A stretch of DNA of 56,771 bases, the filler included, from Platydemus manokwari (lineage: Eukaryota): assembly GCA_037951405.1 (NCBI GenBank). It is 5 parts of 5 records of this genome, joined end to end, with 100 filler letters (N's around TTAATTAATTAA, not from the genome) between each part and the next. Parts side by side here need not be neighbours in the genome. Positions count along the whole stretch, not along the records: positions 10,978 to 25,358 come from JBBMOY011449198.1; 4 more parts are not named here. One strand, 5' to 3'. Numbering within the stretch: the stretch's first letter is position 1; each line of letters begins with the position of its first letter. Below the pieces are notes generated by a model, which was not told the origin of the DNA, ran no database searches, and saw only the letters and a list, made by a program, of their open reading frames with translations. The translations under genes and the position numbers were made by a program. Positions 10,978 through 25,358 of the stretch are shown piece by piece.

Positions 10978-12029
10978 ATATCAAATATATTACTTACTAA
11001 AATTGTATGTAATTCGAGCTTGTTTAAGCTGGTTTAATACTAAAAAGATTTAAAACTAAATATGATAAAAATTTGGTATTTCAAAAGTAAATGTTCTTCA
11101 CCATAGCTGCTCATAAATTCCAAAAATAAATTGGAAAATTCAATTAAGATAAAACTACTGATTTTAAATCTATAATTAGTTAGTTACTGAAAAATCACTG
11201 ATCAAACTGAAAGGAATTTATGAGATTACCATTGAAAAAATGACAGCTTATAAAATACAACTGAATCAAGACACTTTTATGAAGATGTAAAAAATGAATT
11301 GATGACATATTTCTTGTTTAATCGAAATATCTCTGGGTTAATTAATGATTTAATGCCAGTGGCATAATAAGTAAGAAAAAGTGGCTTCCAACATTTAAAG
11401 AAGATGCGGAAATTATTGCAAAACATTGTAATAGTGAAATATTATTTTGTTCTTGGAAGTTGAAGAACAAGACATTAAAAATGAATAATATCATGAAATT
11501 TATTACCAAGTTTGGGAATTTTATTTGAACCCAGGGAATCAACGATTCTGAGAATTTCTAAAAATGATGAATGTCTACTACTATCATAATATCTACTTTT
11601 CAAAGTTAGGTGTTGGTGAGTCGAGCCAAAATATTTGATAAAACAGAATAAATTCACACTTGATCAGAAACCCAATCATGAAAACTGGAGGACAGATTTT
11701 GAATTCTCTCGATAATTTAATCCTTTTATTTTAACGAAATCAATTTTGTATGCTCGATATTAATGACCTCTTAGTCATATTGGGCTCGAAATATTAATAA
11801 GACTTTTAAAATGAATTGTATTGAAAAGATTTTAAAATCTTATCTTTGTTTAAATGATTAATGTTTAAATACTATTTGATTAGTTATCAAGGCGAACAAA
11901 AAATGAAACTAAGATTATACAAAGATCAAATTAGTAAGAATAACTACATGCTTTAAAATAAGAATCCACCAAATGGTCTCGTAATTCCTTTAAACATGTC
12001 TTTCTTTTTTTTATAGATCTGTCATGAAG

Positions 12030-12590
12030 ATTTTATTTAAAATTGTATTTTTTTGTTTAAATAATTGTATTTAAATAGAGCTTGTTGTCGTGACTTTTCA
12101 GTTCGTTTTTAATGCGTGGTTTTTAAATTAGTAGTGGCTTACATAGTCACCACGCATCTGGATTAGATTCTAAGAAGATCAATGACTGAGAATTATGGAA
12201 AAGATGGAGGAATGTGTTCAGACTATATAGATAATGTATAAAGAATGTATACGATAGATATATAGAAAATATAAAGAAGTTGTTGGACAGATATAAAGAA
12301 GATTTAGATAAGATATAAAAAATATATTAAAATATCGAAGAATTAGAGATTTTTATTTAGTTAAATATGGAGAGTATTATATACAATGTCAATTAAGAAT
12401 TCGAGGAAAATTTAACATTTTAAAGAAAAGGAGATAAATTTAAATAGGATTAATTTTTAAAAATTTAATTTTATATAAAATCATATTTTATATAAATTGT
12501 ATTTTTTGTTTAAATAATTGTATTTTTTTGTTATCGTGACTTTTCAGTTTTTTTTGTATGTGAATTTTAAAATAATGGTGGCTTACAATT
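12030..12590 (-). repeat. Interspersed repeat family, copy A (about 445-bp unit plus start of a second unit; TGTAAGCC start)
   Basis: Direct repeats about 12040-12143 and 12495-12587. Core GATGCGTGG..TGTAAGCC..TACTA..AAAAACGAACTGAAAA recurs at about 24135 and 31297. Confidence 0.7.
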
Positions 12591-15500
12591 ACAAATTCTA
12601 ATTTAAGTGGACATTTTATTTGTAATATGTAAGTTCACATTCACGCATTAAAATGGAAGAGAATTTTTGCTAATCTTACTTTCAGAAATTTGTGAAGAGG
12701 TTTACTAGAAATGCTAAGAGAAAATCAGTAGATTCCATTTCTGTTGACCAAAGCTTCTATTGCTACAAGTCAAGCATAAGCATAAAAATAAATATTATTA
12801 GAATAAAGATTCAAAGAACCTCCGTTGAAAAATACCAATGGGATCAATGAAACCAGATGTATAATCTGCATTAATATTTTCACTATTTTAGAATGCACTT
12901 AAGAAATCTATATTAAAGTCTAATGTCAAAGATTGGATACAGAAGATATGTGGTTAACTCCAATTGTGCATTACCTGCTAATTTATTTAATAATTTTTAA
13001 TGGAATTAGTAATTTTATGTGAGGATAAGAGAATTTTATTTTTCATTATACCCAAATTAATGAAAACATAAAAAGGCGTCTAATATCTGATCTACAGTAA
13101 TATTGGTTAGGGGAAGAACTGGAAATGTAATAAATTCATAATACTCCTCGAATCATAAGTGCCGCTGAATTAGATATAATTTTTTTTCCTAATGCATCAT
13201 GTAATTATAGGTCTAATAATGATTAACGGATATTTTCTATAGAATTCTTAAAGATCTCGATCAATTTTACTGCAATAAATAATTTATGAAATAATTAAAA
13301 GTATGTAGTTGGCAATTTTTAATATCTAAAATCAACAAAATTCATGACATTGATAATTCTAGTCTACGAATTAAACATCAATAATATATCTTTATGTGTG
13401 AATATTCTTACTTTGTATGAAGTATAACATTCAAACATGTGGTAAAAATAGATTTAAATTAGCATTTTCCCATTAAAATATCCTAATTATACTAAATTCG
13501 AAAATATGTTCACATTTATTTAATAATCACTACTAGATTGGGATAAAATATTCATTATCTCAATGCCGATTTCAAGATGATCTCATTAAATTTGAGAGTT
13601 GTAAAACTATTTCCCACTTAAGAGTAATCCTTGACAAAAATATCGCTTATTGAAAGGGAATCATTTTAAATATATTATTTTTTCTATACAAATGCATGAG
13701 TTATGTTGGTTTTCCAGCACTGACCATTTTTGTAATCCTTTCGTTTCATCGGCATCCACTAGTATTTCAAATTCGTAATTCCTAACTTGTTCACCAGTGG
13801 TATTCGAACCAGAGTATTTAATATTGCTTAGTATTAACTAGATGGTATCAGTTGTAGATTTCAAAGCACCATGACCTTCCAAAAACAAATTAAATCCAAA
13901 CAACTTATCGAAACTACATGATGATTGCACTTATTTTTTCAAATCAGTTACCGGAGAATCTCCGCTTTACATCTCTAATTTTATAGAAGAGCTTAAAGAT
14001 TATAACGTTATTTACTCGTGAGTAACTGGCCATAATGTAAAATAATTGTTTTTATTAACCATTTTAGATTAAGAGACCAGTTTAGTTTTATTTATCAATA
14101 TTCGTGTCGATTAAATCTTGTAGTATATTAGGATCAGTGTGTGCCAGTAACTATAATGCCGAGTATTATTGTAACCATGACAACTTAATTGCCTATAATT
14201 GAAGGCCATTATTTAACATATTATGATTGCGATGGGTTATATTTATTTTGATGAATGTGAGTCGATATCAGTGTATTTATATTGATTTCGTCAAAGTTAA
14301 TTAGAATATCATTTTTAAATTAAAGACAATGCAATTCAAAAACACTGCTTTGTAATCTAATGAAGAATTTATTGAGTAAAAAAATACAATCAATACAATA
14401 GAATCAACCCTTTATATCAATCCGTCAATGGTTCTACGATATGTTGAGTGGCATTGGATTTATCAGTTTATTCTCCACATTTTTCTTCACACAGACTCGA
14501 CACAACATTGTAAGAATATAAGAGTAGATGATAACATAATAATTAAAACAACAAAAATATTCTTTACAATCAATACATCGTTTAATATATCATCAAAAGA
14601 TATAAATATTGATTTTATTAATTTATTGTGTTTATCTAAATTCAGTGAAGTGAAGAATAATCGTTCTGGCGCGAAATTATATTGGGTAGTTTTTAAACTT
14701 AATTTGGTCTAGTAAAAAAATTTGTAATATTAAGTTAGACTCAATTATGGATAACAAAAATAATTAAATTGTCCGTGTTTAGGAGTATTTGAAGCCTCGA
14801 TATTCTGCGCTGTGGTTTCGTAAATTAAAACAAAAGCTTTAATTTGAATTTATTTATTTATTAAATTAAAATATTCATATTATTATTATTATCATTATTA
14901 TTATAATATTATTATTATTATTATTTTATCAATATTTTATTATATATTTATATTATTATGAAAAATAGATTATCTAATAATAAAAAATTACTAATCGATA
15001 ATTATAAATAAAGGATTACATGAAGAATCCTACAAAACACTATAAGAAATGAACTAAATCGATAAATATGGTAGATTAGATTTCGGAATTAGAATATTTA
15101 TTAATAACATAATAAATAAAGCTTACAAATATCACAATAACGATATTAATTTTAAAATTATCAAATCACGGAAATTATTTTAATAAAAAAATATTTTTAA
15201 TCATTTCATGTCGATAATCATGAAGTGGAAAAGTGCGGGGTTATTTTTAACCTCTGGCAAAATTTAAATAAATAATAGATAATTTTCATTAAAATTATTT
15301 AATGAAAATTTATCAGTAGAAATTATTGATAGAATTTCAAAAATAAAATCTAGTTTCACTAAACTAATTCTTTTAACAAAACCATTAAAAATTTAATTGC
15401 TAACTCAATCAAAGTTCGATCTACCAGTTAGCAAGAACCAATTCCAGGTTTTATAATTTTATTCCAATCTAAAATAATTAATGAAAATAAGAGATTTATT

Positions 15501-15843
15501 TGCAGAGAAAACTCTTCCAATATACGTCCATATCTGTAATAATAATACAACAAAATATGTGTTCTGTAACAGATCTAATAAAGATTTCGAACTCATTGAT
15601 TTGATAATTATCAGAAGGTAAAAAGGAAAGAAAAATATAGTTAATTTTTCATTATCATCTAACCTAAAAATGTATTTTTTGTTTTAATTCTGCATAATGC
15701 ATATTAGGAATTATAGATATTTCGTTTGGTCTGTTTTGACCGAAAATCGAACTACAAAAACAACAATCAAACGAGCATTTATTATGTGATGTAAAACACG
15801 TTTTAAATCATCGTATATGCTAAAACAAATATATCAACTACCG

Positions 15844-16071
15844 TCATTCGAATCGTTTCCAATAAATGATTCTTTTATCAAGTGGCCGATTTCGTTTCCA
15901 ATAGATAATTCTTTTTTCTTCTGGAGCTTGTAAATCAGAATTCAATAATCTATCGATTAACGCTCTTTTCCAGTATAAGATCCTTTTTTCAGGATAAGAT
16001 TCTGCTGTGACAATGGATAAAAATTGAGAACAAACGCCAATGATTATGAGAAATAGTAGTTTGCTATTCAT
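15844..16071 (-). CDS. Neuropeptide/peptide-hormone precursor, 75 aa, yielding ILYW and two IIYW
   Basis: ATG at 16071 (the ORF-track upstream extension from a TTG is probably spurious). Signal peptide MNSKLLFLIIIGVCSQFLSIVTA, three KR-I[L/I]YW-KR cassettes, AATAAA at 15778-15783. Confidence 0.88.
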   Translation of the reverse strand: MNSKLLFLIIIGVCSQFLSIVTAESYPEKRILYWKRALIDRLLNSDLQAPEEKRIIYWKRNRPLDKRIIYWKRFE

Positions 16072-19000
16072 TTCTGTCGTTGGTGAAGCGTTGGATTTCT
16101 TATATTTATTGATTGAAGATTTCATTGGTTGAATGACCTGGGCTGCATTGAATCTGACTGGTTGCCATGAATCCTGTTTTGCAAAATGCCATTCATTTGT
16201 TCGATGTAGGTGGGCGAATCCACTTATAGAAAATAAACCTATTAGAGAAAGGAACAATGAAGATTCGATGGGAACGGTTTTAGGCTTTTGAAAATTGTAA
16301 TCTTTAATAAAGGAATGGTGCAAGCTTTTCTAAGATTTGATATCTTCATTTCCATATGATCGATCAATATCTGGCTATTAATGAGTTATTTATGATGTTT
16401 ATGGGCTTCATGGTGTTTATGATTCGACTCCATGACGAAATTTTGGAATATGCGATGTGTGCTTTACTAATAAAGCACCTTGTCGGATAAAGGTGATCAA
16501 ATAAAATATTTATCAAATCTTTATACTTCAAAGAATTCATACAAAATCTAGTATCATTTTAAAATGAAATTAAATCATTAATATCGATAATAATAATAAT
16601 TTAGATATTAAAAGATAAGTAACATAAATTACCTAAGGTGCATATAGAATGCTTTCACACACAACTAAACACGCACAGTAGCCGACTTTTCACCGGTATT
16701 AAGAATTACTAATCCCAATTATAGTTTTGGAAACATTGAAGAAAAAAGAAAACATAGAAATCTGTTACTATGTGGACAGGAATAACATTGAATATTGACA
16801 GTTTGAAGCAATGGCATATTTAGTTGCTGCATGCTACTTTCAATGAATCTTACACAAAAAATGCTTTGTTGAAAATCAACATTACCAATCCTCTGGTAAC
16901 CAAATTACTTCAGTTCAACTATTAAGTTCAATTTCAGTTAGAGTTGCACCTCAAGAGCTGGTTAAGGATCTTGTGTAGATGGAAACTTTCAGCCAAGTAA
17001 ATATCGATGCTTTAATGACGAAGTATTTTATATTGGTCACATTTTAAGGATCTGTCTAGAAAACAATGATATATTGACTCTTGCTTTAGTCAATAGAAAC
17101 ATTAAAGAAAGACTTTGATAAGATAAATCTCAAAAACATTATCCAGTGAATTACCATGAAGAAAATTTCGTGAGCAAAAATTGATCAGCACATACGCTGT
17201 CTACTTAAATCGACGAAAATTCTTTTCTTGACTTATAAAAAGAAAGAAAATAGTAGGATATATCTCATACCATTTATTTAAGTTATCAGAGAAAGCAATG
17301 GGACTTAAACTAGATTGGCAATATAATGAGATACTAATGCTTAAAAGAAGTACACCATATCATCAGTGCATCACTTAGCTTAACAGTCTGTGCTAATCAG
17401 GAGAAAATCATTAATCAGGTGCTGAGATTAGATGAAATGAAAAAATAAAAAATGTTATCGCATTGATCTCCAATCATCAATCAAAATCACAGCTCAGCTT
17501 CCTATCTGCTAGGTATTGGTTTACTAGAGACTTAATAAGAATATTTTGTTTGAAGCCTTTTGGATTTCTCAGAGCATGTTGAAAGTTAGAGTCACAATAC
17601 AATAATCCCTTATTTCTCATTATTTGATCTATTATAGGCTTATTTGTAAAATATCTTAAGTCCTCTATGACTTTATGTGAGGCCTGCTTAGGTTCAAATA
17701 GAATTGTTGATGATAGTTCCGGAACCTTGTAAAAGTTATTATTATTATATTTTTTTTAACTCCTTACACAAACAGGCACTGCTCTTTAGTCGTCTGAAGG
17801 GGATAGCTGGAGAATATTCAAAATTTATGTAGATCTCAGGAAACAGTAAGTTGGTCACTGCACTAGCAAATACTCGAAAAATTGTTGAATAATCCTAATT
17901 TTTCAATTATGAAATGCACAATCACCAGCTTGATTAAGCAGAACATGTTGTAGATGTGATAAGCATGGTCATAATGCCAAGGATTTTAGATATTGAACTG
18001 TTACAACTCTGCTCAACGAATCAGCCAACATTCATGGCCATATTTACCGTTTTTTGTCGAGAATTTCGATCTTGTTAACAAATTGTGGAACCGTTAAATA
18101 TGTAATAATGCTAAATTTATAATAGTAATTAATAGGTTTGAATAACACCAGTTTTCTAAGCAATCTGATGAAGAAAATCAAAACATTGATCAAGTTATGT
18201 GGATAATCTTTATAAAAATTGAATTATTGATATTGAATCTTATTGGTTAGATTGGTAATCTATCAAAAGTGATTGTAAAAATACACTCAACACTGATCTA
18301 TTGCCAACATAAAAAATTTCCCATTCGATATATTTTATAACTCTACATGATGAATGAAATGTTTATCGTGAGAATGAGAATAATGCTAAATAACCGGAAA
18401 CCAGATAAATAAAATGGATGGACTGCATTTATGATGTCACTTGTGATATATCAATTCTATTCTAATAAGAATCTGCAACTAATTCGTCATTTCTAATTAA
18501 CGTGATAGAGAAAAGGTTAATTAGATTAAGTATTTTTCTTCATTCAAATAAAGAACAAGTTTTATTAAAATTTTGACTTCTACTAATGAACCGATAACCG
18601 TTTTCGTAGTTAAATAAAATTTCATTTATTGAAGTCGAATTGTTGTAGTTTACAGTTGTATTTGTATTTGTATTAATATTTCATCCATTTGCCCGATTTG
18701 ATCAAATTAAGGTTTAAAATGTATTTATTTTATAAAACTACTATTTTATTAAGTAGGAATTTTAAAAAATCCAACCAAAAACATAGTTTATTACAGTTAT
18801 TCTTATATTGATCATTTATTTTAAGTTCTTCAAGTGTAAATCAGCTCCAAATACTTTCGCATTTCTTTGCTTGTTGAAGTCGTCAATAATAATTTGATGA
18901 TCACACAAAATACTCAATATTTTTTAAAATAAATATCTATTGCCAAATATTTAAGCAATTTTTTAAAGATAATAGCTGACAAAATCCCAAGGAGAAAAAA

Positions 19001-20247
19001 TTGATTATAGAACTTCATATTACATTAATAGTCTTTAAATTAATAGACTATAATATAAAATAAGGTTAGTCGCAACCTTAAAAATAATCATCAAACATTT
19101 ATCAACAACAATTTTAATAATAATTCCAATGATAAAACAGGAAATACATTCATACGAATTTTCTGAATCAATAAGCTGAATTGATTTGATAGATAAACTA
19201 TTTTTTACTTCATAATAACTTCGGTCCAGAATTAAATTTTTATACCTACTGAGTAATACTACAAGTTTAAAATATATAAGTAATTGAAAAGAAACAGTTT
19301 AATTGTCATGTAACTAACTCAACACACACACAATTATCAATATCAATTCGATCTTTGTTCATACTTGAGTTGAAGTCTTAATTGAGTTAAAATGATAAAT
19401 GAATTTAAAAATCATGTTTTTATAAGTGAAAATGATATTAAAAAGATTCTATCCTACAAAGTTTTCACGTAACGTTAAAGTTTGTCTTCCAATCATAATT
19501 TTCAAAAAACACGTTGACCCATCTGAGGAGCACAATAAAGCAAACTTGGGCAACTTCTGGCCAATTTTCTCATTCGAATTTTGAATAATTAAGTCTTCAT
19601 TATTGTCAATTATTGTGATTAATTAGCCAAAAAATTTCAAAATTTTCCAATCAAAATCAAATCCAGTTAAGTGACAAATGAAGTTTCTCCTTCACAAAAC
19701 ATCAATTATCAAAACAATTTTTCGTTTTTTTTGAAATTTGGCTTCTGGGTTTTATGGTAATTATTAAAATGTTAATATGAATACATCCGAACCAAGCCAG
19801 TGCTAGAATAGTGTTACAAAATTTTCAGTACATGGATCAAAATTAGTAGTTGGATTTCATAAGTGATCGATGAAGCTATTTCATAAAAGGAAAATCGAAA
19901 ATATAGGGAGACATATAGATGTGAGTATTTAGTCCACATTCCTCAGAAGAGTGTGATGAAAACAAAGTTAATGAAGACTTAATATGTTTATCGCATTAGG
20001 ATGTTGTTACTTGCAATTGTTTAAGCGAACAACATCATTCGATCAAATTTATACTATTCTTTGAAATTAAAAGAATCTTTATAGAGAATAAAATTATTAT
20101 TACTAAAAAAATAATTTCAAAAGCTTCATTATATAAAATAGCTTCACCATAAATTTATTAACAGTTCATTGGTTTGAAGGTTTTATTACTAAACTCCAAT
20201 TTGTATATTTGTTTTTTTATTTTGGTTGTTAAATATAAAAATATTTT

Positions 20248-20958
20248 TATGACTGATGGTAATAACAATGATGTTCATAAATTATTATTATTGCTATTAT
20301 TATTAATATTCCTACTGTTGTTACAACTCTTTCAAATTTTTCTTTCAATTCATAATGGTGAATAGGCACATATATATGGCATTGAATAATAGAATTGGAA
20401 ATTTTCGAAAAAAATTGGAATACGATGATGTAATGATCTATTTATATTTTTGGGTCAAATGATCACTAATTCCATCTAAGAACTACGAGGCTTGAAAAAA
20501 TCTTTCGTTGTTGTTCAATATGGAGAATATGAAACTCGATGTTATGGAATTTTCTCAAATATTCTTTTATGCGATTATATGTTTAATTATAACAAAAATT
20601 TGTCACTTTTGAATATCAAATTAGACATGATATTCAATTATTTGAGTAATGTTGATGGTTTTGATAATATGTTAAACACTGACAATGTTGTGGATGATAA
20701 AGATTAAAAAGTTTTTAAAAAAGCTCAAAGACTGAGTGAAAAGAATTTAAATTTAAAAACCAGAATAGAAAAATGTCACGAAATATTGAAAAAGTCGAGA
20801 TATCCGATCCAAACGATATATTAAATGAAATTTTTAATTGTTTTCCGGATAAAATATCAAATCAAAATGATAATCAAAACAAACCATATTTAGGAGTAAG
20901 CAAGGGATTCAATAAAAACGCTAACGATTGCAACATGAAAACGAGCTTTTTAAGCAAT
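20248..20958 (+). pseudogene. Disrupted putative 5' exon of the sushi-domain membrane protein gene
   Basis: One frame joins ORFs 20174 and 20492 (Leu-rich hydrophobic start) through several stops, then shifts into ORF 20773. That ORF has a phase-0 donor GTGAGA at 20959 compatible with exon 21250. Confidence 0.35.
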
Positions 20959-21249
20959 GTGAGAAAGACTATTGGTGATTGTTAGCCGCTCATACTATTT
21001 TATTAACCACAAAATAATATCAAACCAAAAAAAGTCAAGACACAATCAAGTCTATTTTAAATCCAATTATTTAAACAAATATTTTCAATTTTACATTAAC
21101 TTAATTTTTTATAAAATTAAATTAAATCTGAATAAAATTTGAAGAAATGTAAATTAAAATTGTTTCAAATTAAATTGAAATTCATTTAATATCAATAATC
21201 TCACAGTGATAATTCGGGTTTCAAAACAATTACAATTTTCAGTTTTCAG

Positions 21250-24200
21250 CGTCTGTTGAAATTATTTGCATCTCTAGCATATCATAATAAGTACGAAATT
21301 GATTTTATTAATAACCTTGTAACGTTATATTAATAATACCATTACAATTTTTACGTTAAATATTTTTCCAATATTAAATTAATTTAGACAAAAATTGTTG
21401 GAGGATTATTTGGAAGGACAGATAGTGATTCTGATAATAAGACATTGTCAAAACGGAATTCCGATGAATATCTTTTACCGGACTCATTAAATAACTTAGA
21501 AAACGTGTATAACTTTGCCATAACTTGTAAGCATTTTAGTTCTCGATAAAACAATTGATATTCTATTTACTGAGATCATTTTATATATTGTTATAAAATT
21601 GCGTATACATTTTAATTATAACTAATATTATTCTATTGTAACTTAATTTTAATATTCAAAATTACATTTGACTCGATTAATATCACTCACCCTAATATCA
21701 TGATTATTGGAAAAAATAAAATTTTCATTTAATAATTTTAAATATCGTTTTAATAAATTTGGAAAAATCTGGTTTGCTAGATTTATGAATAAATTAGATT
21801 AAGAAATTTTCAAAAAGTGGATAAAGATAAATTGATCGTTTTAATTGGATTAATTATGATTGGTTATGAAATAATCATTTTTCCTGCAACAGATGATGTG
21901 ATATTAATTGATTTAGGCCGTATTTTAAAATATTTTTAATTTTCACACATTTTAAATCTATTTTATTATCGTATTTAAATCAATTTTACTAAAAGCTATT
22001 TGTAGGGAACACGAATACAGAAACAAATTTATTTTTTGATATGGAATTTAAATATGGAATAGAAAAGTCCTATGTATATTCGGTTACAAACTATACTGAA
22101 TGTGGAGATAGTTTTATGTGTAATTTTGATAGAACTTATTATATCGATAAATCGATCTATGAGTCTACATTGCGAGTCTACAATTCAAGAAAAAAATTAG
22201 ACACGGATTGGATAAAAGCTTCTTTAAGCAGTGAGTTCAACAGTTCATCTTTGATTAAATTTTATTTTTTTATTTTATTTTATAATTCTTGCTAGCTAAT
22301 ATGCATTATAAATTTCATTTCATCTATTTTTTATCTGTTTATTCTATTATTTTTACTTATCATTAATCTTTGACGGCCTGTACTTATGATAAATTAATTT
22401 TCTAATAGATTTAAAACAAATTTCAATTTTTAATAAAAAACAATTCGTTCAGGAGCTTGATTCCATATATTGGATCAAATAATAGAAAAATTCTCCAGTC
22501 ATCCATTAAATGAAAATACTTTTACAAAAATTATAAATCTGACATGTATTTTGAGAAAATTATTTCACCGAGAAACATTTATTAGAATTAATTTTTATGG
22601 ACGGAATTTCAAGAAACATTATTTTCTTTGATTTTCCCAATTTCGTGTTAAGGGTATTTTGATATGTATTGAGATGCGTTAAGATTAAATAATCAACACT
22701 ATGGGAAATCAAACTAAAGTGCTTGATGTTTGAGGTGTGAAATTATTTATAATATTTCAAAAATAAAGCATTGAGAAGTTTCAATATCGACAAAGCTTCC
22801 TGAAAAGTTGAATCGTCGAAAGAAATTTGCGGGATTAATTTCAGTAAAACAATGAGTCATTGCCAGTTGATTTGTGTGAAATTTGATTTGACAATAAAAG
22901 GTTTCTGTGTTCATTTGGAAGGACAATTCGATAAAAGACATTATAAAAAAATCTATAACGTGGTGATAAGGTTTGTTAGCCTTTCATTTATAATAACCTT
23001 TAATCGATGTAAAATATGAGAAATAATCAATCAATCAAATCACAAAGACTCGGTTTCCCGTCCTGTATCTCAAAGATTATTCCAACTTTAAACCACCCTC
23101 GTGTGTTTAAACGAATCGATAATGTACTCATTAAGCAGATAACACAATGAGACTCATTAATATGATAAAAATTGATCGGTGTAAATCAAAATATGACTAA
23201 ATTTGTGATATTTTTTAAACAATAAAGTTTTATTTAAATGACCTTTGTTATTTATCATGATTGTTGTGCAAAACATTAATAATTTGTTTCGGATTGAAAT
23301 ATTTTTACCATTATGAATGGATTATAATTTATTAAAATGTTCTGCTGTAGTTATCAGTAATATATTTCAGGAAATGTTTGTGACCATCCCAAATGGAAAC
23401 TGGTGAAGCTTAATTCAATGAAATTTAATGAAGGCGAAAATATAACGATTGTTGAATGTATTGATCCATCAATGAAAATGAAAAATTCATACCAGATATT
23501 GACATGTGTGAAAATGTCGAATGGTGAAATGCAATGGCAACCGAATCCATTTTTCGATGGTGAATTCTGTGAAAGTATTTCTGAAAGTATATTTTATTTT
23601 CATTTAACTTATTTATGGTCCAGGGAATAAAAACCTTTTCCAATAATTCCTAAATTTTTTGTTTTCTATTGATTTTTATCACGATAACTAATGCGTATTT
23701 TGAGTTTGGAGAATTTTTAAAGATTTAATTTTATAAAATTAAACAAATAAATTTAATTTATATAAATATGATTTTATATAAAATTTGAAATAAACATTTA
23801 ATTCATTTAAATTATCTCACACCCCCCTTTTTTTAAAATCTTTGATTTTGTTTATTGTCTCTGTACCGGATACTCAACATATTTCATTACAACAAAATTC
23901 TAATTCTTCTATCCTTTAATATCTTCTTTTACATTTCCATTATATCTTATTTTATATCTCCATTATATTTTCCTTAATATTTCCTGTATATCTACTTTTA
24001 TATTACCCTTTTATCTCTTCTACGTCTTCATATCTTCCTTTTATCTTCTTTATATGTTGTCAATATAGTCTCAGTATCTTTCTCCTTCTTTTATATAGTT
24101 TTCAATCGTTGATCTTTTCAGAATCGAACCCAGATGCGTGGTCGCCATGTTAGCGGCTACTAATTTAAAAATCACAAATTAAAAACGAACTGAAAAATCA

Positions 24201-25308
24201 AGACAACTAAATTCTATTTTAAATACAAATATTTATACAAATAAATTTAATTTTATATTAATATGTTTTCATCTAAAATTAGAATTAAAAATTTAATTCA
24301 TTTAAAACATATCACAATACCACATAGAGTGTTTTTAAAAAAGCTGAAGAAAATCAAAGGATTTTAAAGAAAAGAAGTATGGCGAATAAATGAGAATTGT
24401 TAAAGGTTTAATGTTACATAAATTTATATTGATTTGTTTATATAATTCGGTGTCTTGACTTTTCAGTTTGTTTTCGAGTCGAGTTTTATAAAACAGTAGC
24501 CACCTTACATTATTAAATAGGTCTATTATCATTTTTTTTTCTAATGTCTATCTTGTCTAATTCATTAAATATTCTTTTATAGAATTAGATTTTATGTCGC
24601 AAATTAATTTAATTTAATTTATCTTTTTCAGATCCTGATAAACCACAAGTTCTATTAGAAGGTAACGTAACATATATTTTAATTGGAGTGGCAGCTTTGG
24701 TTTTGATATGTCTTACTATTTCCATTGTAATCATTTTCAAAAGAAGACAGAAAAATAGACTTACTTCCAAGTTAGTTTCTGGATGTAATTGCACTATCGA
24801 TCTGAATGAGAGTAATATAATCGAAATTATAAAATAAATTTATTTAATAATCTGAGATTTTCATTAGATAATCTAAGTTTTCTTTATCATTAAATTATTG
24901 CCTAAAATGGTTCAATTGTTGCTTTTAGGTATACGACTGAATTCATTTCATAATCATTTAACTCAAATCTTATATCTTTAATGTGTTTTTTTGATAAGGT
25001 TTTTTCGAAAATAATTTTTTGGTAATCAATATATAAAAAATATCAAAAAATAAAATAAGATGCATGGATTGGAATAAATTATTTGTCTGAAACAATAAAA
25101 AGAGCAAACCATTTTGAAACTAACTTGATAATTTTATGAAAAATGGATTCATGTAGCTTTTAGAGTTATTATTATTATTATTAAACAGTTATTTTATTGA
25201 CGTTGTTATAAATTTGCAATTAAGAACATTTTAATTTTAGCACAAATTTGGGCTTGAGTGTCAGTTCAGAATTTCCCATGGAAGGAATATATGAAAATCC
25301 TTTAGACG
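21250..25308 (+). CDS. Type I membrane protein with sushi/CCP-like domain, TM helix and cytoplasmic YENP motif (multi-exon, partial)
   Basis: Phase-consistent GT-AG exons 21250-21318, 21388-21526, 22006-22230, 23371-23574 (CDHP...C...LTC....W......C, phase 1-1), 24632-24770 (YILIGVAALVLICLTISIVIIF-KRRQK) and 25241-25308 (EGIYENPLD). Confidence 0.7.
23700..24300 (+). repeat. Interspersed repeat family, copy B (intronic)
   Basis: Reverse-complement similarity to 12030-12500, including the pyrimidine-rich tract and CAGATGCGTGG core; boundaries approximate. Confidence 0.65.
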
Positions 25309-25358
25309 GTAAGTGTATTTAATGTTAAAAATAAAATTGATGTACAAATACACTTATT

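What the first reader, a model, noticed from the sequence alone, without database searches (positions are those of the whole stretch)
15778..16110. Compact prohormone encoding non-amidated aromatic tetrapeptides ILYW and IIYW: candidate undescribed peptide signalling system
Seen: a 75-aa intronless ORF with a signal peptide and three KR-flanked copies (ILYW, IIYW, IIYW), spacers ESYPE, ALIDRLLNSDLQAPEE and NRPLD, a TATA-like TATAAGA about 30 nt above the ATG, and AATAAA 60 nt after the stop. Known: KR is the prohormone convertase site, and no Gly means no amidation. I do not recognise xxYW-OH among the flatworm peptide families I recall (FMRFamide-like, NPY/F, pedal peptide, GLRxMRLa, AYWASRMa). 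Inference: a new ligand family with an unidentified GPCR or peptide-gated channel. The ORF track hides it behind a spurious 84-aa extension.
Basis: partly seen in the sequence, partly recalled or inferred. Interest (0 to 1): 0.82.

Follow-up and report, generated by a model that had tools for sequence, protein, structure and literature searches.

The report
Small secreted precursor of I[IL]YW tetrapeptides
A 75-residue gene-like reading frame encodes a signal peptide followed by three Lys-Arg-flanked copies of the tetrapeptide ILYW/IIYW, which looks like an ordinary kind of secreted peptide-hormone precursor carrying an undescribed peptide, but neither its expression, its conservation nor its host organism could be checked.

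Summary
It lies on the minus strand: ATG at 16071, TGA at 15846-15844, 75 aa. The protein has a hydrophobic signal-like N-terminus and three [E/D]-KR-I[L/I]YW-KR units, none followed by Gly. The copies differ almost only by synonymous changes, so the peptide and its dibasic sites appear to be under selection. This open frame is by far the longest in a 14.4-kb, 25% GC, otherwise non-coding piece.

The best reading is a multi-copy secreted peptide precursor. A kexin/prohormone-convertase enzyme would cut it at KR, and a carboxypeptidase would trim it to free-acid ILYW and IIYW (x2).

No relative was found in Pfam, two word searches over 5.8 billion protein clusters, HMMER over 1.84 billion representatives, JGI metagenomes, planarian prohormone tables or 8.4 million full texts. 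These collections are poor in animal sequence. The only run holding the DNA is genomic, so expression and conservation remain untested.

The TATA and AATAAA motifs are near chance frequency here. Compact precursors of non-amidated, aromatic-ended multi-copy peptides are already known (planarian SPP-16, acoel LWDY/AWDF, achatin, fungal KEPs). I rate it a probable new member of a known kind, of modest interest.

The parts
15844..16071 (-). Coding sequence of the 75-aa precursor (ATG at 16071, TGA at 15846-15844)
   Evidence: It is part of the longest stop-free frame in the 14.4-kb piece (161 codons, the next longest being 110).
16003..16071 (-). Signal-peptide-like N-terminus MNSKLLFLIIIGVCSQFLSIVTA, with probable cleavage between A23 and E24 (V at -3, A at -1)
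   Evidence: Kyte-Doolittle 9-residue means reach 3.5 over residues 3-13 and fall below 0 after residue 20. The cleavage site is inferred from the -3/-1 rule; no SignalP was available.
15964..15987 (-). Copy 1: KR-ILYW-KR (AAA AGG ATC TTA TAC TGG AAA AGA)
   Evidence: (family D1)
15892..15915 (-). Copy 2: KR-IIYW-KR (AAA AGA ATT ATC TAT TGG AAA CGA)
15853..15876 (-). Copy 3: KR-IIYW-KR (AAA AGA ATC ATT TAT TGG AAA CGA), followed by FE and the stop
15985..16003 (-). ESYPEK segment directly after the signal peptide: probably a decayed fourth copy of the unit
   Evidence: It is 84% identical at the DNA level to the adjoining RILYWK segment 15966-15984 (family D2). The Tyr codon is retained.
15778..15783 (-). 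AATAAA 60 nt after the stop: a possible poly(A) signal
   Evidence: Position confirmed. The motif occurs 3.3 times per kb per strand in this piece, so it is weak evidence.
16098..16104 (-). TATAAGA 33 nt before the ATG: a doubtful TATA box
   Evidence: Position confirmed. TATA-like heptamers occur 2.8 times per kb per strand. A TATA here would place the transcript start at about the ATG itself.
16072..16329 (-). 86 stop-free codons in frame upstream of the ATG, with the only in-frame ATG at 16125 (an alternative 93-aa product with a long n-region)
   Evidence: The stretch stays open in only 0.35% of mononucleotide shuffles. The other two frames have 4 and 5 stops. Unexplained.

Best explanation
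This is a small, single-exon eukaryotic gene for a secreted multi-copy peptide precursor. The proposed mechanism has four steps. (1) The N-terminal 23 residues direct the protein into the ER and are removed. (2) In the secretory pathway a subtilisin-like proprotein convertase (PC2/PC1 in an animal, kexin in a fungus) cuts after each of the six Lys-Arg pairs. (3) A carboxypeptidase E/D (or Kex1) removes the C-terminal Lys-Arg. (4) This releases one ILYW and two IIYW tetrapeptides with free carboxyl ends (there is no Gly, so PAM cannot amidate them), plus acidic spacer peptides ESYPE, ALIDRLLNSDLQAPEE, NRPLD and FE. The hydrophobic aromatic tetrapeptides are the likely active products, acting as extracellular signals (a neuropeptide or peptide hormone if the host is an animal, which I consider most likely). 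Shown: the sequence architecture and the selection signature on the repeats. Inferred: every processing step, secretion, bioactivity, cell type and receptor.
For: The ORF and its peptides are exact. The N-terminus is strongly hydrophobic with a polar c-region and V-x-A before E24. Three units [E/D]-KR-I[L/I]YW-KR form a DNA repeat family. A two-copy pattern is never seen in 100 shuffles. Between units, 6 nucleotide differences fall in synonymous codon pairs and 2 in a single Leu/Ile codon, although only 18% of random single changes would be synonymous (binomial about 7e-4). The frame is the longest in the piece, and local GC rises to 31-36% against 18-25% around it. Protein-language-model neighbours are mostly animal neuropeptide precursors (PDH, DH31, tachykinin, galanin, NPF, PrRP, NPS), though all score below 0.9. 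The same compact architecture with MS-confirmed non-amidated products exists in planarians (SPP-16 and SPP-11) and acoels.
Against: There is no evidence of transcription: the only public run holding the DNA is genomic. No homologue was found in any search, so conservation is not shown. The exact protein is not on record. The language-model recognition score is low (1901). The promoter and poly(A) motifs are near chance frequency. The host organism is unknown. The upstream 86 open codons are unexplained. The tetrapeptides are unusually hydrophobic for a soluble signal.
Confidence: 0.6

Rival explanations
1. It is a fungal (or other non-animal opisthokont) Kex2-processed repeat protein (KEP). 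The host would be an AT-rich fungus such as a glomeromycete or an anaerobic gut fungus, and the tetrapeptides would be secreted signalling or pheromone-like peptides, or the Tyr-containing cores of a cyclised RiPP. The processing chemistry is the same as in the best explanation; only the organism and the biology differ.
For: All three criteria of the KEP pipeline are met: signal peptide, at least 3 repeats, and KR between repeats, with repeats covering at least 15% of the length (12 of 75 aa = 16%) (criteria read). Rhizophagus irregularis has expanded, Tyr-rich KEPs, and its genome is AT-rich (my knowledge). Nothing in the piece proves an animal origin.
Against: Most R. irregularis KEPs carry STE13 X-A/X-P dipeptides after KR, and none is present here. 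Each copy is bracketed by KR on both sides with unrelated acidic spacers, which is the animal prohormone layout rather than head-to-tail KEP units. No IYW/LYW/YWKR motif occurs in the KEP paper's supplements. No RiPP tailoring gene, or any Pfam-recognisable ORF, lies in the 4.9 kb and 9.3 kb of flank held on the two sides. There is no RIP signature (TpA/ApT 0.79, (CpA+TpG)/(ApC+GpT) 1.37). 14 kb with a single gene is sparse for most fungi.
Confidence: 0.15
2. It is an ORF that is not, or no longer, expressed. It could be a recently dead copy or a retro-copy of a real prohormone gene located elsewhere in the genome, or a young lineage-restricted ORF without function.
For: There is no transcript evidence and no homologue. 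It is intronless and sits in a gene desert between interspersed-repeat copies, as a processed copy might. The promoter and poly(A) motifs are not above chance.
Against: The frame is intact, including the start, signal peptide, all six KR pairs and the stop. The synonymous-only divergence between units records selection on the peptide, at least in the past. Local GC is elevated as in exons. No poly(A) tract or target-site duplication flanking the ORF was noticed in the sequence read.
Confidence: 0.15
3. The coding region is longer than 75 aa. The 86 open codons upstream (16072-16329) would belong to the protein, either from the ATG at 16125 (93 aa, with a long n-region before the hydrophobic core) or through a splice acceptor from an upstream exon. 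In the second case the hydrophobic stretch would be internal.
For: The upstream stretch is stop-free in only 0.35% of shuffles, while the other two frames hold 4 and 5 stops. There is an in-frame ATG at 16125. Out-of-frame ATGs at 16148-16196 would hamper scanning from a far-upstream transcript start.
Against: There is no ATG upstream of 16125 in frame. The extension has no Pfam match and no homologue. Met1 sits directly in front of a canonical n/h/c signal sequence. That strand is T-poor and G-poor there (73 T and 33 G of 258), which lowers stop frequency.
Confidence: 0.08

Closest known systems
Schmidtea mediterranea SPP-16 and SPP-11 (secreted peptide prohormones; Collins et al. 2010, PMC2953531)
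   Same: These are compact (about 70-100 aa) precursors with a signal peptide followed by short KR-flanked peptides. SPP-16 gives several copies of a non-amidated peptide with an aromatic C-terminus (KR.QFDPIMY.KR) that was confirmed by mass spectrometry.
   Different: The peptide sequences are unrelated (heptapeptide QFDPIMY versus tetrapeptide I[IL]YW). No IYW/LYW/YWK string occurs anywhere in that paper or its 8 supplements. Homology is not shown, and the host of the present gene is unknown.
Lineage-specific non-amidated multi-copy peptides of acoelomorphs (LWDY, AWDF, SSxxxF; Thiel et al. 2018, PMC6188537)
   Same: They are short multi-copy peptides ending in a free aromatic residue. They are clade-restricted, were discovered from sequence and were confirmed by LC-MS/MS.
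   Different: The motif differs (Trp-Asp-aromatic). Those precursors carry many evenly spaced copies. No sequence relation was tested beyond motif comparison.
Achatin-type peptides of molluscs and annelids (GFAD, GFGD, GFWD)
   Same: They are non-amidated tetrapeptides released from precursors by dibasic cleavage.
   Different: Achatins are acidic (C-terminal Asp), begin with Gly-Phe and need a D-residue at position 2 (title of ref. 42). I[IL]YW is neutral, fully hydrophobic and ends in Trp. The motif test is not met.
Fungal Kex2-processed repeat proteins (KEPs; Le Marquer et al. 2019, PMC6339444; Umemura 2020, PMC7329392)
   Same: They have a signal peptide, at least 3 near-identical short motifs and KR sites, and the products include 3-8 aa peptides. 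The authors themselves note the resemblance to animal neuropeptide precursors.
   Different: There is no STE13 signature, the spacers between doubly KR-flanked copies differ from the KEP layout, no fungal context is present and no matching motif occurs in their tables.
Proenkephalin (vertebrate opioid precursor)
   Same: It yields non-amidated short aromatic peptides (YGGFM/YGGFL), each bracketed by dibasic pairs and present in several copies per precursor (my knowledge of the family, not tested here).
   Different: It is much larger, has a Cys-rich N-terminal domain and its aromatic residue is N-terminal. There is no sequence similarity.

Membership tests
Animal multi-copy neuropeptide / peptide-hormone prohormone | N-terminal cleavable signal peptide | tested here: met
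   n/h/c layout MNSK / LLFLIIIGVC / SQFLSIVTA, hydropathy up to 3.5, V-x-A before E24. This was judged by hydropathy and rule only; no dedicated predictor was available.
Animal multi-copy neuropeptide / peptide-hormone prohormone | Repeated peptide copies flanked by dibasic convertase sites | tested here: met
   Three copies of KR-I[L/I]YW-KR, each preceded by Glu or Asp.
Animal multi-copy neuropeptide / peptide-hormone prohormone | Peptide copies more conserved than spacers / under purifying selection | tested here: met
   This could be tested only between copies within the gene. Six nucleotide differences fall in synonymous codon pairs against 2 in one Leu/Ile codon (P about 7e-4), and the spacers are unrelated.
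Animal multi-copy neuropeptide / peptide-hormone prohormone | Orthologues with conserved peptide in related species | tested here: inconclusive
   No relative was found, but these collections hold little animal sequence and the host is unknown.
Animal multi-copy neuropeptide / peptide-hormone prohormone | Transcribed in neurons or endocrine cells with PC2; mature peptides detectable | not testable with these tools
Animal multi-copy neuropeptide / peptide-hormone prohormone | Host is an animal | tested here: inconclusive
   The piece has no other recognisable gene, no tRNA and no Rfam hit above threshold. CpG o/e is 0.92 and GC is 25%, which fits planarians but also other taxa.
Named Schmidtea mediterranea prohormones (Collins 2010; SPP-20 of Ong 2016) | Identity or shared peptide motif with a listed prohormone | tested here: not met
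   No IYW, LYW or YWK occurs in the text or in the supplementary sequence and peptide tables held as text (8 files for Collins, 2 for Ong). The listed families are RL/RMamide, RFamide, Wamide, planarin and others.
Fungal KEP (Kex2-processed repeat protein) | Signal peptide, at least 3 repeats, KR/KK/RR between repeats, repeats at least 15% of length | tested here: met
   Criteria. Here there are 3 repeats and KR sites, and 12 of 75 aa = 16% (32% if the KR pairs are counted).
Fungal KEP (Kex2-processed repeat protein) | Fungal host; often a STE13 X-A/X-P signature after KR | tested here: inconclusive
   The host is unknown. There is no X-A/X-P dipeptide after any KR (the residues are IL, AL, II, NR, II, FE). 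The signature is optional in the definition.
Ustiloxin/phomopsin-type (dikaritin) RiPP precursor | Precursor clustered with tailoring genes (UstYa/DUF3328 oxidases, tyrosinase, methyltransferase, peptidases) | tested here: not met
   No ORF of at least 76 codons in the 14.4-kb piece has a significant Pfam match.
Achatin-like peptides | Motif G-[FYM]-x-[DE] with an acidic C-terminus | tested here: not met
   The peptides are ILYW and IIYW.

The most novel reading that the evidence does not exclude
I[IL]YW-OH is the ligand of a previously unknown, lineage-restricted peptidergic signalling system in an AT-rich invertebrate (possibly a planarian). It would be a fully hydrophobic, non-amidated aromatic tetrapeptide acting on an orphan GPCR or a peptide-gated channel, perhaps after a further modification such as L-to-D isomerisation at position 2, as in achatin.
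Probability: 0.35. Interest if true: 0.5.

Novelty: new member of a known kind. Interest (0 to 1): 0.3.

Why it matters
If the gene is expressed, it adds one more lineage-specific multi-copy peptide to the invertebrate repertoire. The product is unusually short and hydrophobic, cheap to synthesise, and easy to screen against orphan receptors or in behavioural, regeneration or reproduction assays. It also shows that bacterial-style ORF tracks (TTG start, 159 aa) can mask small eukaryotic prohormones. Such clade-restricted precursors are found routinely whenever a new transcriptome is mined, and the processing logic is textbook. It therefore opens no long-standing question, and a specialist would be only mildly surprised.

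Tried and rejected
(1) Pfam scan of the 75-aa protein and of the 161-codon frame gave only noise (E of 0.17 or worse).

(2) The word-based search of 5.8 billion clusters found nothing. The 75-aa query had no candidate. The 161-aa frame with region 87-161, used to reach longer kin, had 5 candidates and none scored.

(3) HMMER over 1.84 billion representatives gave one hit, P0001 (E 4e-4). It is a 729-aa helicase-like protein with its own repeats and was rejected as a repeat-driven chance match.

(4) The JGI metagenome scan with a two-copy degenerate pattern gave one hit in a bacterial contig, in the wrong frame, and was rejected.

(5) Exact-sequence look-ups of the 75-aa and 93-aa products found neither on record. 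One search used a start one codon short of the ATG and is void.

(6) In the sequencing-run search the single holder, X1, is genomic: one contig spans 15373-19179 at even depth. No expression test was therefore possible.

(7) The first literature search was swamped by 'familywise'. Repeat searches for IIYW, ILYWKR, KRILYW, IYWKR, LYWKR and others found nothing relevant. Flatworm, spiralian and xenacoelomorph neuropeptide papers hold no such motif. Koziol 2016 is not held.

(8) Alternative genetic codes (ciliate-type) gave no coherent long ORFs.

(9) The RIP-type fungal AT-isochore idea was rejected on dinucleotide indices.

(10) The search for paralogues or other prohormone-like ORFs in the piece found none. 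A YWKR string at 23660 (-) lies in no ORF.

(12) Structure prediction was not attempted. A 75-aa processed precursor has no fold to compare.
Full report
**The observation**

The finding's coordinates bracket a minus-strand ORF. The three units are:
- KRILYWKR at 15964-15987
- KRIIYWKR at 15892-15915
- KRIIYWKR at 15853-15876

AATAAA lies at 15778-15783, 60 nt past the stop. TATAAGA lies at 16098-16104, 33 nt before the ATG.

**Is it more than chance?**

Yes, for the ORF and its repeats.
- The stop-free frame (161 codons) is the longest in the 14.4-kb piece. The next longest are 110 and 100 codons, and the mean stop-to-stop length is 11.5 codons.
- The three units form a 27-nt DNA repeat family at 89% and 78% identity (D1).
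- A degenerate two-copy pattern occurs once in the window and in none of 100 dinucleotide-preserving shuffles.
- The units differ at 6 nucleotides in synonymous codon pairs (AGG/AGA, ATC/ATT, ATT/ATC, TAC/TAT, AGA/CGA) and at 2 nucleotides in a single Leu/Ile codon. Only 18% of random single changes in a unit would be synonymous, so the binomial probability is about 7e-4.

This last point is the signature of selection on the encoded peptide and on the Lys-Arg pairs, not of a drifting DNA repeat. Each KR is also preceded by Glu or Asp. The segment ESYPEK right after the signal peptide is 84% identical in DNA to the adjoining RILYWK (D2), so it looks like a decayed fourth copy.

The transcription signals are not above chance. 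In this 25% GC DNA, AATAAA occurs 3.3 times and TATAWAW 2.8 times per kb per strand. A TATA box 33 nt before the ATG would start the mRNA at about the ATG itself.

**The surroundings**

The piece (10978-25358) is 25% GC with CpG observed/expected 0.92. It has only three ORFs of at least 80 aa.
- None of the ten longest frames has a significant Pfam match.
- There is no tRNA, and no Rfam family reaches its threshold.
- GC rises to 30-36% from about 15700 to 18100, a block that includes the ORF.
- Alternative genetic codes do not reveal hidden genes.
- No second prohormone-like ORF or paralogue is present.

The gene therefore sits alone in a gene-poor, repeat-bearing region.

**The upstream 86 codons**

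Positions 16072-16329 are stop-free in frame with the ORF. The other two frames carry 4 and 5 stops, and only 0.35% of composition-preserving shuffles stay open. The only in-frame ATG there is at 16125, which would give a 93-aa product with a long n-region. Out-of-frame ATGs lie at 16148-16196. The stretch has no family match and no homologue. I keep the 75-aa reading, because Met1 directly precedes a canonical signal sequence. I record the open stretch as unexplained rather than 'spurious'.

**What it most likely is and how it works**

The architecture is that of a secretory multi-copy peptide precursor:
- The n-region is MNSK.
- The h-region is LLFLIIIGVC, with hydropathy up to 3.5.
- The c-region is SQFLSIVTA, with V at -3 and A at -1.
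- Six Lys-Arg pairs then bracket three near-identical tetrapeptides and unrelated acidic spacers.

From the established biochemistry of kexin/prohormone convertases, carboxypeptidase E/D and PAM, the predicted products are ILYW and two IIYW with free C-termini (no Gly donor), plus ESYPE, ALIDRLLNSDLQAPEE, NRPLD and FE. These steps are inferred, not shown.

A protein-language-model neighbour search returns mainly animal neuropeptide precursors (PDH, DH31, tachykinin, galanin, NPF, PrRP, NPS). All scores are below 0.9 and the recognition value is low, so this is only a lead.

**Searches for relatives and for expression**

All of the following came back empty:
- Pfam.
- The word search in 5.8 billion clusters at 41-131 aa and, using the 161-codon frame with region 87-161, at 89-282 aa.
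- HMMER against 1.84 billion representatives. Its one hit is a 729-aa repeat protein that I reject.
- A JGI metagenome scan with a two-copy pattern. Its one hit is a bacterial chance match in the wrong frame.
- Exact look-ups of the 75-aa and 93-aa products. One search used a wrong start.

These collections are dominated by microbial sequence, so the blanks do not prove that the gene is orphan.

Only one public run holds the locus. It is genomic, with a 3807-nt contig spanning 15373-19179 at even depth. Transcription could therefore not be tested, and the reads tools are exhausted.

**The organism**

- Low GC, absence of CpG depletion and low gene density fit a planarian-type genome. They also fit other AT-rich eukaryotes.
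- A RIP-mutated ascomycete isochore is excluded by dinucleotide indices (TpA/ApT 0.79, (CpA+TpG)/(ApC+GpT) 1.37).
- An AT-rich early-diverging fungus cannot be excluded.

**Comparison with what is known**

- The exact peptides appear nowhere in 8.4 million full texts.
- They are absent from the text and supplementary files held for Collins et al. 2010 and for the SPP-20 paper, and from the main text of recent flatworm, spiralian and xenacoelomorph surveys. So this is not one of the listed Schmidtea prohormones.
- The principle is not new. Smed SPP-16 is a roughly 100-aa precursor whose KR-flanked, non-amidated, Tyr-ended QFDPIMY copies were seen by MS.
- Acoelomorphs have MS-confirmed LWDY and AWDF multi-copy peptides.
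- Molluscan achatins are non-amidated tetrapeptides.
- Fungal KEPs share the same blueprint, and their authors note the resemblance to animal neuropeptide precursors. The present protein formally passes the KEP pipeline criteria. It lacks the STE13 signature common in Rhizophagus KEPs and has the 'KR-peptide-KR-spacer' layout typical of animals.
- No RiPP tailoring genes are nearby.

**Verdict**

- The most likely reading (about 0.6) is a genuine secreted precursor of I[IL]YW tetrapeptides. Within that, an animal neuropeptide or hormone is the commonest case.
- The rivals are a fungal KEP (0.15), an unexpressed or dead copy (0.15) and a longer coding region (0.08).
- It would be a new member of a well-known kind, so interest is modest (0.3).
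- The decisive data are organism identity, RNA-seq, sister-species loci and peptidomics at [M+H]+ about 594.33. They lie outside what these tools could reach.

Noticed in passing
window 16072-16329 (-): 86 stop-free codons lie in frame upstream of the precursor's ATG. They stay open in only 0.35% of shuffles, while the other two frames have 4-5 stops. They include a second hydrophobic stretch (SLFLSLIGLFSISGFA) but no ATG before 16125.
   Followed up: partly
window 15985-16003 vs 15966-15984 (-): The first spacer, ESYPEK, is 84% identical in DNA to the adjoining RILYWK unit. It appears to be a decayed fourth peptide copy that has lost its N-terminal KR.
   Followed up: partly
window 14457-14549 (-): There is a C/D-box snoRNA-like match to Rfam snoZ159/U59 (29.6 bits, gathering score 39). 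The D box CUGA and part of the guide align, but the C box is degenerate (AUUAUUA). It is probably a chance match or a decayed copy. It lies 1.3 kb downstream of the peptide gene on the same strand.
   Followed up: partly
window 12084-12266 and 24025-24207; also 12030-12134, 12483-12580, 24411-24499: A 183-nt inverted repeat (78% complementary) has arms 11.8 kb apart that bracket the gene region. Related direct copies suggest an interspersed repeat family (MITE/SINE-like). No associated coding ORF was found.
   Followed up: no
window 15700-18100: A 2.4-kb block has raised GC (30-36% against 18-25% around it) and extends about 2 kb upstream of the gene. It holds no ORF above 58 aa. It could be regulatory sequence or non-coding exons.
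   Followed up: no
window 14865-14959: A (TAT)n / 23-35-nt AT-rich microsatellite array lies here. Logan contigs of the only holder run break at this place.
   Followed up: no
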